A program made the position numbers and the translations under genes. Shown here piece after piece: positions 25,741-52,082 of a stretch of 64,000 nt of DNA. The notes below the pieces were generated by a model. The model worked only from the letters and a program-made list of their open reading frames with translations, had not been told where the DNA came from and searched no databases. How positions within the stretch are numbered: the first letter of the stretch is position 1; each line of letters opens with the position of its first letter. Source of the DNA: Glycera tridactyla. Lineage: Eukaryota. Where the stretch lies: positions 30,070,001-30,134,000 of the forward strand of contig OZ286464.1 in assembly GCA_965644265.1 (NCBI GenBank), given 5' to 3'.

Positions 25741-26235
25741 GACCCATGAGTTATGGTAGGAAGAGAAGCAGATGAACCATGAGTTATGGTAGGAAGAGAA
25801 GCAGATGACCCATGAGTTATGGTAGGAAGAGAAGCAGGTGACCCATGAGTTATGGTAGGAAGTGAAGCAGATGACCCATGAGTTATGGTAGGAAGAGAAG
25901 CAGATGAACCATGAGTTATGGTAGTGAGAGAAGCAGATGACCCATGAGTTATGGTAGGAAGTGAAGCAGATGACCCATGAGTTATGGTAGGAAGTGAAGC
26001 AGATGACCCATGAGTTATGGTAAGAAGTGAAGCAGATGACCCATGAGTTATGGTAGGAAGAGAAGCAGATGAACCATGAGTTATGGTAGTGAGAGAAGCA
26101 GATGACCCATGAGTTATGGTAGGAAGTGAAGCAGATGACCCATGAGTTATGGTAGGAAGAGTAGCAGATGGCCCATGAGTTATGGTAGGAAGAGTAGCAG
26201 ATGGTCCATGAGTTATGGTAGGAAGAGAAGCAGAT
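25741..26235. repeat. 33-bp minisatellite, about 15 copies
   Basis: Unit gacccatgagttatggtaggaagagaagcagat; highly homogeneous with sharp edges. Confidence 0.95.
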
Positions 26236-27860
26236 GGTCCGTCAACACTTCAAATCACGCCGACCGCTGAGCTTTGGAATGAAGGTGAAGGAAAGATGTA
26301 GCTACTTTATGAATCACCAACATACGAATATGGCAAGAATATGGAATTGGCCATGTGATGAGGATATAATACAAATGTAGAATATAATGCAAATGTACTC
26401 GTTTTCCGAATCAAACAACTCGCGAAAGAAACCAGAGAATCAGTATCGATAGAGCTTGGCTGCTATAAAGGGTGAAATAAATATGGATATCACGTTGTCG
26501 AGGTTTTGACGTAAATAAGATCGGATAGTATCTGAATATTTCGGGAGGTGAAAAAGCAGAAACACGTTTCACCCACTGAGGAAACAGTGTAGATGCTTGT
26601 AGAAACATGCTCCGAGTCACTAATGAAGAAAAACTATCAAGCATCATGCAACTGATATTTTTCTGAAGCAAAACAATGGCTGAAAACCAGGAAGTAAAAT
26701 CAGTATGAAAGTTGTTCGCGGATGCATTAGCACCAGATAATCGAACTGTCAGCGATGATAAATTGAAAACAGTATACTGTATGTGAATGGGAGCCCTGGT
26801 GGTAACCTATCCCGATTCTGGGGACTGCATCACCGCATGACGTCACTATATGAAAACTCTATGGTCAATCTTTCAAAAAAGCCTACCTATGATGCTAGGA
26901 GCGGAGGATGGGGGAGTATATTTCAAATACAAAAACATAGTTTGATATTGTTAATGACATATTTTAAAGAGTGTGTATATTCGTTTCAGTTGAGATGTTG
27001 GTCCAATATTACAACCAATATTACAACAAAACTCTCTTTGAAAGCCTACGATCGCACCAAAAATACTCATCTTCTGGGTTAGCACACATTGAGGGCAGGA
27101 TTCGTTACGGTACTCCGCTAATTATAAATCATTCTTGTTGCATTATGGTCAGGGTCTCCAAGTTCTATATACGTCAGAAGATGCATTGAATTTCACAAAG
27201 TGGTGTGATATTGGAAATCTGTTGTCGTATCTAATATGTTTCCATCATCTATTACCACTATTCAATCCATATACATCACTCTTATTATCATTTTAGCGAA
27301 ATAGATAATTGATTCAGTGGAGAATGTGAAGTCTTGGTAATCAATGACTTGAAATGACTCGTGTTTGACGAGATTGCTGACCTGTTGGATCCCTTCAAGG
27401 AATGTCCGGCTTTGCAATAAACTAGGGAGGGCAAATAATTCACTTGGATTAATTTATGCAATCTAATTAGGGGTCAACGCATGCTATTAGAGCCCAATAG
27501 ACGCTCCGCATCTTACAATGCCATAGAATAGCTCGGTCTGGGCATTGACTTTCATCAGAGATGTCCTCTCTGTAATATATTTGAGAGAACACATGGCCTA
27601 TGACCGCCATCAAGGATGCCCACTGCTGTGATATACTGAATGGAGCGAATGGTTTACTAGTATTGCATCTACTCAATCTACTCCGATGTTCTGGCAGCTG
27701 AGTATATTGCAATGGACACACTGCATCTCACGTCCTCATACATAAGCTTCACCTAATTCCCCCTACATACAGACTATGATTTTACGATCAGAATCATTGT
27801 TACATATATATGATAATAAATCCAAGCTTCATTCTGGCTGACTTGATCACCCTAGTTATG

Positions 27861-38242: not shown

Positions 38243-38452
38243 TCATAAGCTGGTTCCGTCCTTGAATTCGTCCAGATTGATAACGACGCGTTTCCCATTC
38301 ATACTCGGCGACGTCGGCGTACTGTCGGGTGGTTCGCCCTTCATGGCTGCCTCGGTCATGGCGCACAACTTGTACGATAAGTGGGGGTTGTTTAACTTCA
38401 TGTTCTTCTGCTTCAATACTTCAAGCTGCATATAAAGCCGCTTGAACTCCTC
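38243..38452 (-). CDS. GPR158-like (CG31760): GPCR last coding exon: EEFKRLYMQLEVLKQKNMKLNNPHL...DGTSL*
   Basis: Acceptor tttttttctatatcttcacag; 210 nt including TGA; resembles the GPR158 cytoplasmic coiled-coil segment ELKKLYAQLE...NNPHL. Confidence 0.92.
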   Translation of the reverse strand, partial: EEFKRLYMQLEVLKQKNMKLNNPHLSYKLCAMTEAAMKGEPPDSTPTSPSMNGKRVVINLDEFKDGTSL

Positions 38453-41011: not shown

Positions 41012-41203
41012 CTGTATATCTTTTTCTAGGGAGCTGCTGTAGTCGCCTTCGTCGCTGACCTTCTCGGCGACGCTGTTCGAGTTGTTGGAGACGACCGTAC
41101 TCATGACGGTGTTGGCCGACTTCGGTGCCGCTACGTATTTGGAGCCTCGGCTCATCGTCGTTTGAGGCTGCTCTTTACCACTATATTTGTATACCAGATA
41201 GGC
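41012..41203 (-). CDS. GPR158-like (CG31760): GPCR exon (proximal C-tail): AYLVYKYSGKEQPQTTMSRG...SSSLEKDIQ
   Basis: Acceptor tgtgtttcag, donor CAG|gtcagt; 192 nt, phase 0 to 0; open frame joins both neighbours. Confidence 0.88.
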
Positions 41204-41575
41204 CTGAAACACACACAGACAATAGGCAAACGTGAAGCAAAGAGAATCTCAAACGCTCTTTATCATTGTATTTGTACATAAAATAGGCCTCGGAGCATAT
41301 GCAGACAGCAGGCAGATGTAAAGCAATGTGATATCAATTGCTCTTTAACAAAGTATTGTGTATCAGATAGGCCGGGAGCACACACAGACAACAGACAGAC
41401 GAGAAGCAATGATGATCTCAAACGCTCCCTATCAATCTATTTCTATACCAGATAGGCCAGAAACACAATCAGACAACATGCAAACATGGAGCAATAAGGA
41501 TCTCAAAAGCTCTTCATACATTCATCTGTATACCAGATAGGCCTGCAACACGCACAGACAATAGGCAAACGTGCG
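41170..41575 (-). repeat. Five-copy 84-85-bp tandem repeat made of the GPCR splice acceptor plus the first ~11 codons of the exon
   Basis: GCCTAT exon-start equivalents at 41203, 41288, 41372, 41457 and 41542 (spacing 85, 84, 85, 85). Confidence 0.9.
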
Positions 41576-42899
41576 GCAGAGGTGGTGAAGTCGTGGTTGT
41601 GCTCGATTGATAGTTGTAGTAATTTCTGCTGTTGTTGACGAACTGCTCTGAATGAAATTGCAAACGACGATTTGTCTAGTATCCGAGGTCGTTTGGTGCA
41701 AATGTAGATGATGGTTCTATTGTCAGCCTATGTAATTGTTGCATTGTGATTGCACTTGTTGGCATTCTCGTCTTTACTGCTGCTGTTACTGTGTTGAGCG
41801 TTGTTGAGGATGGCAGTGGTGCTCGTATTGGTGATCGTAATGAAGTTCACGTAGGTGAGCGCAACACTGTCAAGATGGTTGAGTGATTGTGGTTGTGATG
41901 CTGGTGGTATTGGTGGTAGGGGTGAGGAGGATGATAAGTGATTTTATCTTTGTGCTCGACAATTGCTGTTCCTGCAGATCAAGTATAGTGTCGATGATTG
42001 TGGTGATGATGGTGATGGTGATGTTGCTGGTGGTCATAATGAAGTGTGTGGTGCGGATGGTTGTGGTCTTATCTTTTTCTGTGGTGGTGGTTGGGTGATA
42101 ATAGGGGGGGGGGGGTCATAGTTGCATGTGACTAGATGTGCTGTAGGTACCAGATTCCGGAGTTGTAATAGAGCGGCGGACCGTTGCGTATTGCTAATAA
42201 GTTGGCACTGACATATGGTGCATATACAGCGGTGCATATCTTCGTGATTCGGCCATTTCAGTTTGCTTCAAGCTGGTTTGACTTCAACAGCATCTAGTCA
42301 TCCAAAGGATTATGACATCATCCTATGATGATCACATGAATCTGAATGAACGTATCGATGACATATTTGAATGCGTAACTACATGCATGCATACACTCAG
42401 GTCAGATAGCAATTGGCTGGTAGTGAGTATACAACATACTGGCGATGGTACCGGTGATCCTCATACATTATATCAGTACCCATATTGGCAGATAGTTGTT
42501 TTTCGCCCCATCAGTATCATCCGGGCTATATTGGGACGCACTGACAAAGGGCATAGATCACTCAATATGTCTGACGTGATTCATATTGGTGACGATGGTT
42601 GAGGTGGCAGAATGGTGCTGGTCATGTTGGTGATGTCTCTGATGATGGTGGTCGGTGGAGGAGACAACTTATGCTCAATAACAGCCATCAATCACATAGC
42701 GATATCATATAATCAGTCACTGTCACATGGCAGCATAGACAAAAATCTCTCATTCTGGGAAGCTGTGAAACAAGAGGGGCGGTGAATGGCCACTGCGAAT
42801 CAATGGTTAAGTATAGGACTTCCCGCCTTCCCGTTCGCCTAGCATCATCCATCAACCGCATCCAAGAGGATGCTGGGCTCATCCGGCCTTAGTTACCAT

Positions 42900-44829: not shown

Positions 44830-46310
44830 TTATCAATAGGGTCAGCTCTCTTCTTCACTTGATTGACGATAGGAAAAGCTCTCACTGCTTTATGATGATG
44901 ATAGGACTGCTTTTTTTCTGAATGATTTCCGTAAGAATGGCTCATTTGGCTTTCTGATGGACGAGAGGAATGACTGTCTTTGCTGTATTATCGATGATAG
45001 GAAGAGTTCTCTCTGTTTATTCACCGACGATAGGACTGGTTCGCTTAACTGTCAGATCAACTCTAGAGATAGCTCATCTTGTTGCATGTTCGATTATGAG
45101 ATCATCTACTTTTGCTGTATGATCAAAAATAGGATAAGCTCTCTCTGGTTCATGGTCAGTGATAGGATGATCAATGGTATGATCTCCGATAGAACCAGCT
45201 CTCTTTTTCTAATGTCGATTATAAGACTAGCTCTCGTCACAATATGATCGATTATAGGACCAGCTCTCTTAGTTGTATGAACTATGATAGGTCCAGCTCT
45301 CTTTGTTGTATGATCTATGATAGGACCAGCTCTCTTTGTTGTATGATCTATGATAGGACCAGCTCTCTTTGTTGTATGATCGAACATAGGACCAGCTCTC
45401 TTTGTTGTATGATCTATGATAGGACCAGCTCTCTTTGTTGTATGATCTATGATAGGACCAGCTCTCTTTGTTGTATGGTCGATCATAGGACCTGCTCTCT
45501 TTGTTGTATGGTCGATCATAGGACCAGCTCTCTTTGTTGTATGATCTATGATAGGACCTGCTCTCTTTGTTGTATGTCGATCATAGGACCTGCTCTCTTT
45601 GTTGTATGGTCGATCATAGGACCAGCTCTCTTTGTTGTATGATCTATGATAGGACCTGCTCTCTTTGTTGTATGTCGATCATAGGACCAGCTCTCTTTGT
45701 TGTATGATCTATGATAGGACCAGCTCTCTTTGTTGTATGGTCGATCATAGGACCAGCTCTCTTTGTTGTATGATCTATGATAGGACCAGCTCTCTTTGTT
45801 GTATGGGCGATCATAGGACTAGCTCTCTTTGTTGTTTCATTGATTATAGGACTAGGTCTCTTTGCTGTATGATTGATGATGGAACTCACTCTCTCTGCTG
45901 TATGAACTAATGATTATAGGACTAGGTCTCTTTGCTGTATGATCAATGATAGGACTAGACCTCTTGTGACTAGCTCTATTTGTTGTTTGATGGATGATAG
46001 GACTAGCTTTCCCTGTTTCTATGATCGACGAAATCACTAGTTCTCTTTGTTGTATGACCGATGAAAGGACTAGATCTCTTTGTTGTATGGTCGATGATAG
46101 GACTAGATCTCTTGGTTATTTGGCCGATGATAAAACTAGATCTTATTGTTGTTTGATCGATGAAATGACTAGATTTTTCTGTTGTATGATCAATGATAGC
46201 ACTAGGTCTTCATCTTATCATTGATGGTATGACTAGCTCTCTTTGTTACATGACCGACGATTGGAATAACCGTCATTGTTTTATGATCTATGATGGGACT
46301 GATTTTTTTT
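44830..46310. repeat. 33-bp minisatellite with homogeneous core (about 45270-45820) and degenerate flanks
   Basis: Unit gataggaccagctctctttgttgtatgatctat with variant gtcgatcataggacctg; produces the DRTSSLCCMIY and HTTKRAGPIID ORF repeats. Confidence 0.95.
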
Positions 46311-50505: not shown

Positions 50506-50611
50506 CTTACTGCCGAATAAAAATGCTAGTGTTACAGTTGTAGTAAGTTGTGTGTGGATGAATAATACTAGATATAATAAATCCGGGTTGGCCGGAGATT
50601 GTAAGAAAAAC
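50506..50611 (-). CDS. GPR158-like (CG31760): GPCR exon (ECL3 and TM7): FFLQSPANPDLLYLVLFIHTQLTTTVTLAFLFGSK
   Basis: Acceptor ctgtttcag, donor AAG|gtgagt; 106 nt, phase 2 to 0. Confidence 0.95.
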
Positions 50612-51125: not shown

Positions 51126-51329
51126 ATAAAAGAGGTCTTTTCAGATATGTATATCGAGGATGTATGCAACCACACTAGAATGGTCGACCGCAATGAGGTG
51201 TCATTGGCGTATGATTGCTGCCTCTAAGCCTTCGAAAAATACCTGATGGTGAACTTTCACATTTACATTTACATTTATACACGAGGGGTGAAGGGATACA
51301 GGGAAGGGGATGAAATAGGTGGTACTTAC

Positions 51330-51468
51330 ATGGTAATGTTGAGAAATAAAGAGAGTAAAGTTTCATTATATATTGCCCAACTAATGAAGCGGCTTTCGTT
51401 AAACTCGGAGGGGGCCTTCCGCACGACTATACACAGACGAATACCCCAGAGTAGAAGGCACAGCTCGG
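51330..51468 (-). CDS. GPR158-like (CG31760): GPCR exon (TM5-TM6): (A)ELCLLLWGIRLCIVVRKAPSEFNESRFISWAIYNETLLSLFLNIT(M)
   Basis: Acceptor tttattttcag, donor AT|gtaagt; 139 nt, phase 1 to 2; class C P-x-x-FNE motif. Confidence 0.96.
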
Positions 51469-52082
51469 CTGAAAATAAACCAACATTAGCTCAGTATCAC
51501 ATATTCTTGTTCATCTGATCACAGAGGCACGCACGCACGTACGTACGCACACACGCTCACATCAGCAAACATACTTCAAAAGATGATCTCAACATCGATA
51601 TTCCTCCCTCACGCGCTCACACACGTTCCTCCCTCTTTCTCTCCCCCCCCCCCTCTCTTCATCTTTCTCTCTCCCTCTCTCTCTCCATATATATATATAC
51701 ACTGATAATTTGAAACATTTGTTCCAGCTAACCCTGATCAGAATTAATCATATACAGTATGATTGATACTCTCCAGCGGACGTCGTCATTGGACAGATGT
51801 GAATTGTGTCATCACAGTTCAACTCTGCCCAAACAATGGGAACCAGACACCATAGACATATGCCGTGGTGTCCCCATTTAGACCCAGGAGTTGAACATTT
51901 ACAGAATGATCAACCCATAGATCCATAATTCAATTTGAAATGACAACCTAGTTGTCTGTGATTTTCATATCCTTTCAGTGACATGAGATGGGAGAAATTG
52001 TCCAATTTCCCCTTCCTCTGGAGCTATGTGTCAAGCACCCACATTGAATTTTGGAATTTTGGATCAGCCCCATTCCTTCTGT

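What the first reader, a model, noticed from the sequence alone, without database searches (positions are those of the whole stretch)
41170..41575. Tandemly amplified splice acceptor creates decoy 3' splice sites that would cut off the GPCR C-tail
Seen: the acceptor and first ~11 codons of the post-TM7 exon are repeated five times at an 84-85 bp period into the upstream intron. The most upstream copy (41542), met first in transcription, keeps a near-identical pyrimidine tract and CAG (cacgtttgcctattgtctgtgcgtgttgcag vs cacgtttgcctattgtctgtgtgtgtttcag). It reads AYLVYR then TGA (41522-41524). The copy at 41288 keeps AG, still encodes AYFMYKYNDKE, and frameshifts to a stop. The copies at 41372 and 41457 have lost the AG. 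Known: the GPR158 cytoplasmic coiled coil docks RGS7-Gbeta5. Inference: decoy use would give an NMD substrate or a tail-less 7TM receptor, so a repeat whose copy number may vary could tune receptor output.
Basis: partly seen in the sequence, partly recalled or inferred. Interest (0 to 1): 0.72.

Follow-up and report, generated by a model that had tools for sequence, protein, structure and literature searches.

The report
Splice-acceptor minisatellite in GPR158-like intron
The last 51 bases of an intron plus the first 34 bases of the next exon of a GPR158-type (metabotropic-glycine-receptor-like) gene have been copied four extra times head to tail; this is a real example of an already described repeat type ("mirage") that normally leaves splicing alone, and nothing yet shows that the one spare copy which still looks usable is ever used.

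Summary
A 404-bp array with an 85-bp period and 4.8 copies lies at 41170-41573 on the minus strand. It repeats the 3' splice site and first 11 codons of the penultimate exon of a GPR158/179-family class C receptor gene. Copies starting at 41457 and 41372 have lost the AG. The copy at 41288 keeps a weak gAG and frameshifts to a stop. The copy at 41542 keeps a near-identical acceptor and reads AYLVYR-stop. The downstream last exon encodes the helix homologous to the RGS7-docking coiled coil of human GPR158.

The regulatory reading is not supported. The units are 62-75% identical, so this is an old, decayed array and not a hypervariable one. The only transcript-like public contig covers the exon alone and stops at the canonical boundary. 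The array is missing from all nine other orthologous loci I recovered. Boundary-spanning repeats occur there about as often as the local minisatellite density predicts.

This repeat type is known from amphioxus "mirages" and the human F7 intron 7 VNTR, where spare sites stay silent. One oddity remains. Copy 1 is a mosaic, with 2/47 differences up to its stop codon and 8/18 after it. That points to gene conversion or to real use.

The parts
41170..41573 (-). Whole tandem array: 85-bp period, 4.8 copies, spanning the 3' end of the 9.3-kb intron and the first 34 bases of the penultimate exon
   Evidence: TRF; nhmmer; unit alignment
41490..41573 (-). Copy 1, the most upstream. It has an intact pseudo-acceptor ttgcag (AG at 41544-41543) and its first 'exon' base is 41542. 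It reads AYLVYR then TGA at 41524-41522. It differs from the true acceptor only at -10 (t>c) and -4 (t>g) over -31..+16
41405..41488 (-). Copy 2: AG mutated to TG (ttctg|GCC at 41457)
41322..41402 (-). Copy 3: AG mutated to CG (tcccg|GCC at 41372)
41236..41319 (-). Copy 4: keeps gAG after a 1-nt insertion, with first base 41288. It reads AYFMYKYNDKE, shifts frame through the true exon start and stops at TAG 41183-41181
41204..41234 (-). True acceptor region (cacgtttgcctattgtctgtgtgtgtttcag), with a consensus branch-point-like ttcAc whose A is at 41233 (-30)
41012..41203 (-). Penultimate coding exon (64 codons, AYLVYKYSGKEQPQTTMSRGSKYVAAPKS...EKDIQ), which completes the TM7 'SKAY' end and the proximal tail. 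All 11 listed differences in a relative's contig lie at third codon positions
50506..50611 (-). TM7 exon (...TVTLAFLFGSK|gtgagt), the donor for the 9.3-kb intron 50505-41204
51330..51468 (-). TM5-ICL3-TM6 exon, which gives the family assignment (7tm_3; GPR158 and GPR179)
38243..38452 (-). Last exon: EEFKRLYMQLEVLKQKNMKLNNPHL... is homologous to the human GPR158 716-747 coiled-coil helix. It ends ...DGTSL then TGA at 38245-38243
41584..41588 (-). The only consensus yUnAy motif (ttcAc, A at 41586) in range of the copy-1 acceptor, 44 nt upstream. The homologous -30 site reads cgcAc in copy 1

Best explanation
This is a 'mirage'-type minisatellite. A segment straddling the intron/exon boundary, about 51 intron bases plus 34 exon bases, was duplicated in tandem and amplified to five copies in this lineage. 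The likely cause is replication slippage or unequal exchange in a minisatellite-rich genome. The copy continuous with the rest of the exon (41203) is the working 3' splice site. The four upstream copies are intronic relics that have been decaying for a long time. Two have lost the AG and one has a weakened tract and a shifted frame. Copy 1 keeps a good-looking acceptor, most simply because a short gene-conversion tract from the true acceptor refreshed it. Shown here: the anatomy, the gene identity, the consequences of each possible junction, the lineage restriction and the age of the array. Inferred: that the spare copies are silent or nearly so, and that conversion explains copy 1.
For: The array and its five copies are real and occur at one place in the genome. 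Unit identity of 62-75% points to an old, non-homogenised array. A profile of the units finds one acceptor copy in each of L002, L004 and L005 and two in L003. Self-probe and TRF surveys find no extra acceptor copy in L006-L009 or L011. The duplicated acceptors in L003 (111-nt period) and L010 (204 nt) differ in length and extent, so they arose independently. Minisatellites of period 15 or more cover 5.9% of the window and 7.6% of all loci held. TRF-detected arrays on 3 of 20 boundaries of this exon across lineages is therefore not an excess (my binomial estimate is about 0.2). The transcript-like contig of run X1 covers 41028-41205 only and nothing lies on 41206-41575. It stops 2 nt past the boundary, as expected when the upstream exon also ends in AG. 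Loss of AG in 2 of 4 spare copies fits neutral decay at 15-30% divergence. The literature describes the same structure in amphioxus Adh3, globin BflGb6, TnC and PGBD5 with normal splicing (PMC3087553 and PMC3902484). Its donor mirror image, the human F7 IVS7 37-bp VNTR, has functional but silent pseudo-sites (PMC1557585).
Against: Copy 1 is not decaying evenly. It has 2/47 differences from the true copy over -31..+16 against 8/18 over +17..+34 (Fisher p=0.0003), and 2/47 against 32/142 for the pooled inner copies (p=0.004). The switch falls at its in-frame stop codon. This pattern would also be expected of a used, constrained alternative acceptor. Its polypyrimidine tract and NCAG match the true site by consensus, and a yUnAy motif lies 44 nt upstream with no intervening AG. 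The RNA evidence is thin: one 183-nt contig at depth about 3, from a run whose RNA status is only guessed, and with no junction letters shown. A minor or NMD-degraded isoform would not be seen.
Confidence: 0.72

Rival explanations
1. The copy-1 acceptor (41542) is a genuinely used alternative 3' splice site that is kept by selection. It yields either an NMD-targeted transcript (unproductive splicing that lowers receptor output) or a complete 7TM receptor ending ...FGSKAYLVYR, without the proximal tail, the RGS7-docking helix or the C-terminal TSL motif.
For: Conservation is mosaic and ends exactly at the stop codon (2/47 against 8/18, p=0.0003). The acceptor is equal to the true one by consensus, with a branch-point-like motif at -44 and no AG in between. 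It is reached first during transcription of a 9.3-kb intron. The retained codons AY complete the class C TM7 '..K.Y' end. The missing part includes the helix homologous to GPR158 716-747 (PMC8611064). In L010 an independent upstream duplicate of the exon start also keeps an open, protein-like frame with an in-frame indel and its own stop.
Against: No RNA lies on 41206-41575 in any of the four runs laid. The site is absent from all other orthologous loci, so it is not a conserved feature of the gene. The homologous branch point at -30 has lost its U (cgcAc). The resulting exon would be 531 nt, which is long for exon definition between introns of 9.3 and 2.6 kb. Published mirages and the F7 VNTR leave spare sites silent. 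Gene conversion explains the mosaic equally well.
Confidence: 0.15
2. The array is the worn-down remnant of a tandem exon duplication, that is, an alternative or mutually exclusive version of the exon like the one seen in L010, and not a boundary minisatellite.
For: L010 carries a 204-nt-period duplicate of the exon start, with a 41-codon open frame resembling the true exon. L003 has an in-frame second copy that includes more of the exon.
Against: Each unit in the window contains only 34 exon bases followed by 20 bases that match the intron stretch just upstream of the acceptor. That is a simple 85-bp head-to-tail unit. No unit has a donor site or any further exon homology. tblastn finds no second copy of the exon in the window or in the genome.
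Confidence: 0.05
3. The array is an assembly artefact or a dispersed repeat or transposon fragment that happens to resemble the acceptor.
For: None beyond the general caution that repeats can be mis-assembled.
Against: The copies differ by 25-38% from each other, whereas artefactual duplications are near-identical. The stretch has a single place in the 2.04-Gb, 207-contig genome. There is no Rfam family in 38-52 kb.
Confidence: 0.02

Closest known systems
[quoted passage not shown]
   Same: These are head-to-tail units that contain the end of an intron, its splice signal and the first part of the exon. BflGb6 is likewise an acceptor-side array. Many units keep AG or GT, and the authentic site lies at the array's edge. 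Splicing is reported as normal (PMC3087553, PMC3902484).
   Different: The host here is a lophotrochozoan-type genome, not a cephalochordate one. The units are much more diverged (62-75% against 81-100% in BflGb6), so this looks like an old, frozen array. No length polymorphism could be tested. One edge copy shows mosaic similarity to the true site.
Human F7 intron 7 37-bp VNTR, whose first unit spans the exon 7 donor
   Same: It is a minisatellite straddling an exon-intron boundary, so the authentic splice site is accompanied by a row of look-alike sites. These are competent in constructs but silent in the natural context (PMC1557585).
   Different: F7 repeats the 5' splice site, with identical units and known copy-number alleles, and the site next to the exon is the first one met. 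Here the 3' splice site is repeated, the real site is met last, and the rules of choice (branch point, first AG, exon definition) are different.
Unproductive splicing coupled to NMD (poison exons and alternative splice sites)
   Same: Use of 41542 or 41288 would place a stop codon far upstream of the last exon junction. This is the classical configuration for NMD.
   Different: Regulated cases are defined by observed isoforms and usually by strong cross-species conservation. Neither is seen here.
Tandem exon duplication giving alternative or mutually exclusive exons
   Same: It shares the local tandem duplication of exon sequence together with its acceptor. The orthologous locus L010 shows this form (reviews PMC9013439 and PMC9741552 listed).
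   Different: The window's units hold only 11 codons and no donor, so they cannot act as substitute exons.

Membership tests
Mirage-type splice-junction minisatellite | Head-to-tail tandem repeats of minisatellite unit size | tested here: met
   TRF gives period 85 and 4.8 copies. nhmmer finds five contiguous copies.
Mirage-type splice-junction minisatellite | The unit spans an intron-exon boundary and carries the splice signal | tested here: met
   Each unit is a polypyrimidine tract, (C)AG or its mutated remnant, and GCCTAT... exon bases. The exon is confirmed by orthologues and by third-codon-position differences.
Mirage-type splice-junction minisatellite | The authentic site is the terminal copy, continuous with the rest of the exon | tested here: met
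   Only the copy at 41203 continues into ...QPQTTMSRGSKYVAAPKS, which is conserved in 13 orthologous fragments.
Mirage-type splice-junction minisatellite | Spare copies are not used in mature mRNA | tested here: inconclusive
   One low-depth contig from a run only guessed to be RNA covers 41028-41205, and nothing covers the spare copies. No junction reads were available.
Mirage-type splice-junction minisatellite | Length instability or polymorphism between haplotypes | not testable with these tools
   No DNA run of the same species was offered. The 62-75% unit identity argues against present-day instability.
GPR158/GPR179 (metabotropic glycine receptor) family of class C GPCRs | Class C seven-transmembrane domain | tested here: met
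   Pfam 7tm_3 scores 37.8 bits, above the 33.5 cut-off, on exon 51329-51490. The best solved-structure hits are GPR158 (1e-7) and GPR179 (4e-5), ahead of the mGluRs.
GPR158/GPR179 (metabotropic glycine receptor) family of class C GPCRs | Cache-like extracellular domain (GPR158_179_EC) in place of a Venus flytrap | not tested
   The N-terminal exons lie beyond the window. The nemertean orthologue XP_074645793.1 carries MCP-like_PDC_1 and GPR158_179_EC, and its C-terminal half maps exon by exon onto the window.
GPR158/GPR179 (metabotropic glycine receptor) family of class C GPCRs | Cytoplasmic coiled-coil helix that recruits RGS7-Gbeta5 | tested here: met
   The sequence homologue is present: the last exon aligns to GPR158 716-747 (E 1.5e-4) and to GPR179 680-708. 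Binding itself was not tested.
Regulated unproductive splicing (AS-NMD) | The alternative junction is observed in RNA | tested here: inconclusive
   None was seen, but the data are very thin.
Regulated unproductive splicing (AS-NMD) | The alternative site is conserved across related species | tested here: not met
   No homologous extra acceptor exists in L002 or L004-L009. L003 and L010 have independent duplications of different length.
Regulated unproductive splicing (AS-NMD) | A premature stop lies more than 50-55 nt upstream of the last exon-exon junction | tested here: met
   The stops at 41524-41522 and 41183-41181 lie 510 and 169 nt upstream of the 41012 junction.

The most novel reading that the evidence does not exclude
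The most upstream copy is not a relic but a maintained alternative 3' splice site. Its acceptor and the five codons that finish TM7 are held nearly identical to the real site up to an in-frame stop. Choosing it would give either a tail-less 7TM receptor that cannot dock RGS7-Gbeta5 or an NMD-coupled reduction of receptor mRNA. That would be a mirage repeat co-opted into a splicing switch, with parallel experiments in the L003 and L010 lineages.
Probability: 0.12. Interest if true: 0.6.

Novelty: new member of a known kind. Interest (0 to 1): 0.25.

Why it matters
As it stands this is a well-preserved, datable example of a splice-junction minisatellite outside cephalochordates and humans, on the acceptor side. 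It sits in a neuromodulatory receptor gene whose tail is the docking site for RGS7-Gbeta5. It is useful as a natural test of how the spliceosome ignores a nearly perfect upstream copy of a real 3' splice site. If the upstream copy were used, it would show how a neutral repeat can be recruited to make a truncated receptor or an NMD switch. Without RNA evidence it remains an ordinary by-product of a repeat-prone genome.

Tried and rejected
1. **Dispersed repeat or paralogue.** Whole-genome DNA and protein searches gave a single place, so this was rejected.
2. **Structured RNA.** There is no Rfam match in 38-52 kb.
3. **Public reads.** Only four runs were offered and none is on record as RNA. They were laid at 80% likeness. 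One exon-only contig came from organism A and one genomic contig from a roughly 90%-identical relative, organism B. The relative's flanks are too diverged to say whether it has the array.
4. **A degenerate upstream copy in L004.** I suspected one by eye (GGCCTACGGGTACACAAAT), but the unit profile did not detect it at E<=10, so I dropped it.
5. **Excess of boundary-spanning arrays at this exon across lineages.** The excess is not significant against a background array coverage of 6-8%.
6. **A full-length protein from the window's own species.** None is in the protein libraries, and the best hit is 68% identical, so no annotated junction could be read.
7. **Joined spliced model.** I did not build or search one.
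8. **Quantitative splice-site scoring (MaxEnt type).** This was not available offline, so I compared the sites position by position instead.

Full report
**What is there**

On the minus strand, 41170-41573 is a tandem array with an 85-bp period, 4.8 copies and 72% matches. A profile made from the units finds exactly five contiguous copies in 40-52 kb, each with E between 1e-21 and 1e-23, and none elsewhere in that span. The stretch has a single place in the 2.04-Gb, 207-contig genome, and the exon it touches is also single-copy.

Each unit holds three parts:
- A GT-rich pyrimidine tract with the acceptor or its mutated remnant.
- The first 34 exon bases (GCCTATCTGGTATACAAATATAGTGGTAAAGAGC and variants).
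- Twenty bases that correspond to the intron stretch just upstream of the tract.

The five 'first exon bases' and their reading are as follows:

| Copy | First base | Acceptor | Reading |
|---|---|---|---|
| 1 | 41542 | ttgcag | AYLVYR, then TGA at 41524-41522 |
| 2 | 41457 | ctg, AG lost | none |
| 3 | 41372 | ccg, AG lost | none |
| 4 | 41288 | gag | AYFMYKYNDKE..., frameshift, TAG at 41183-41181 |
| 5 | 41203 | tttcag, the true site | continues into the exon |

My only corrections are that the exon ends at 41012 (64 codons) and that the unit is 51 intron plus 34 exon bases.

**The gene**

The exon at 51468-51330 matches Pfam 7tm_3 above its cut-off. It hits human GPR158 (1e-7) and GPR179 (4e-5) ahead of the mGluRs.

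The exhaustive protein search with the exon returned 13 orthologous fragments and one full model, XP_074645793.1, 'metabotropic glycine receptor-like' of the nemertean Tubulanus polymorphus. That model carries the domains MCP-like_PDC_1, GPR158_179_EC and 7tm_3. Annelid members (Ridgeia, Lamellibrachia) are in the same clusters.

Mapping that protein on the window gives these minus-strand exons:
- 63372-63262
- 62320-62165
- 53342-53259
- 51468-51330
- 50611-50506 (TM7, ...LFGSK|gtgagt)
- 41203-41012
- 38452-38246, followed by a stop at 38245-38243

I searched the exons one at a time by reference.

The repeated acceptor thus belongs to the penultimate exon, at the end of a 9.3-kb intron. The last exon aligns to human GPR158 716-747 (E 1.5e-4). 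That lies within the 708-763 region assigned to the cytoplasmic coiled coil that recruits RGS7 (PMC8611064).

The exon is under coding constraint. In a contig from a roughly 90%-identical relative (organism B), all 11 listed differences fall on third codon positions.

**Is any spare copy used?**

By sequence, copy 1 is as good as the real site over -20..+16. It differs only at -10 (t>c, still a pyrimidine) and at -4 (t>g, the unconstrained N of NCAG). The homologous branch-point-like ttcAc at -30 has become cgcAc, because the repeat ends at -31. Another ttcAc lies at -44, with no AG in between. Copy 4 has a weak gAG.

Only four public runs were offered and none is on record as RNA. In run X1 a 183-nt contig covers 41028-41205 and nothing else. 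No contig from any run lies on 41206-41575. The contig stops 2 nt past the exon boundary with 3 letters left over. This is the geometry expected for the canonical 50506>41203 junction, because the upstream exon also ends in AG. That last point is my inference, since the letters were not shown. The result is consistent with normal splicing, but at depth about 3 it cannot exclude a minor or NMD-degraded isoform.

**Evolution**

I recovered ten orthologous loci (L002-L011). Two of them, L005 and L011, share the same acceptor sequence and so represent one lineage.
- The unit profile finds one acceptor copy in each of L002, L004 and L005 and two in L003.
- Self-probe and TRF surveys show single acceptors in L006-L009 and L011.
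- L003 has a second acceptor copy 111 nt upstream, in frame.
- L010 has a diverged duplicate of the exon start 204 nt upstream. It has a 41-codon open frame, an in-frame 3-nt indel and its own stop.
- L003, L005 and L011 carry arrays across the donor of the same exon.

These duplications differ in period and extent, so they are independent events. The window's 85-bp array is specific to its own lineage.

Such recurrence looks striking, but minisatellites of period 15 or more cover 5.9% of the window and 7.6% of all sequence held. Three TRF-detected arrays on 20 boundaries is not a significant excess (my binomial estimate is about 0.2).

Unit identities of 62-75% show that the array is old. The longest exact runs shared by any two units are about 20 nt. 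Frequent copy-number change, on which the 'tunable' idea depends, is therefore unlikely today.

**What is known**

Tandem repeats that span an intron-exon boundary were named 'mirages' in amphioxus. They are described for Adh3, TnC, PGBD5 and the globins BflGb6 (acceptor side) and BflGb9. Many units keep AG or GT, yet splicing is normal (PMC3087553; PMC3902484).

The human F7 intron 7 VNTR is the donor-side analogue. Its pseudo-sites are competent but never compete with the authentic site (PMC1557585).

Earlier notes of this scan say that the same genome holds many such arrays and that, where transcripts were available, only the copy next to the real exon was used. I took these as leads only. 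I checked the literature claim but not those loci.

**The one unexplained feature**

Copy 1 is a mosaic. Against the true copy it has 2/47 differences over -31..+16 but 8/18 over +17..+34 (p=0.0003). The inner copies show 7, 10 and 15 of 47-48 in the first zone and 5, 4 and 3 of 18 in the second. The switch coincides with copy 1's stop codon.

A short gene-conversion tract from the true acceptor is the simplest explanation, and it fits what is known of repeat turnover. Constraint on a used alternative site would look the same. The test was chosen after seeing the data, so the p-value overstates the case.

**Verdict**

The consequences of decoy use are right, but use itself and tuning are unsupported.
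- The best explanation, at about 0.72, is an old, lineage-specific mirage-type acceptor minisatellite whose spare copies are silent or nearly so.
- The main rival, at about 0.15, is real use of the 41542 site, giving an NMD substrate or a tail-less receptor.
- Novelty: a new member of a known kind. Interest: 0.25.

Noticed in passing
L010:318-443 and 522-725: In one orthologous contig the start of the same exon is duplicated 204 nt upstream. The duplicate has its own tttcag acceptor, a 41-codon open frame (AYVVFTKYRRKEQPLTIVQGGAKYVAAPNSTTNVTETTTNM then stop) and an in-frame 3-nt indel relative to the true exon. It may be an alternative short-tail exon.
   Followed up: partly
L003:4600-5044: A second acceptor copy lies 111 nt upstream of the true one (4661 against 4772), in frame with it. 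In addition, a 63-nt x 2.4 array repeats the donor of the same exon (GG|gtgagt).
   Followed up: partly
L005:3454-3632; L011:306-549: Arrays of 49-nt and 78-nt period span the donor of the orthologous exon in two closely related contigs. The predicted ORF P0015 reads straight through the repeated exon ends.
   Followed up: partly
L006:25100-25125 (Tubulanus polymorphus): The RefSeq model uses an acceptor 9 nt further upstream (ttgtag|GCTTTTCAAGCG). The bases that form the ttt-cag acceptor in other species are coding (AFQ) here.
   Followed up: no
window 45177-46299: A 33-nt x 33.6-copy minisatellite lies in the same 9.3-kb intron and gives long repeat-made ORFs on both strands. Further arrays lie at 25741-26236 (33 nt x 15), 60269-60487 (39 nt x 5.6) and 40-754 (173 nt x 4.1).
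   Followed up: no
window 41240-41247 and 41157-41164 (minus strand): The 20-nt spacer of the repeat unit contains CGTTTGAG, the reverse complement of CTCAAACG at +40..+47 of the true exon. This may be a template-switch scar from the original duplication, or it may be chance.
   Followed up: no
window 38243-38260: The receptor ends ...DGTSL, and the annelid and nemertean orthologues end ...DATSL and ...NPTSV. This is a conserved C-terminal motif of the PDZ-ligand type, and any decoy-spliced product would also lose it.
   Followed up: no
window 41204-41575, gradients among copies: Divergence from the true copy rises towards the exon in the acceptor zone (2, 7, 10, 15 differences) but falls in the exon zone (8, 5, 4, 3). 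There are too few copies to test this.
   Followed up: partly
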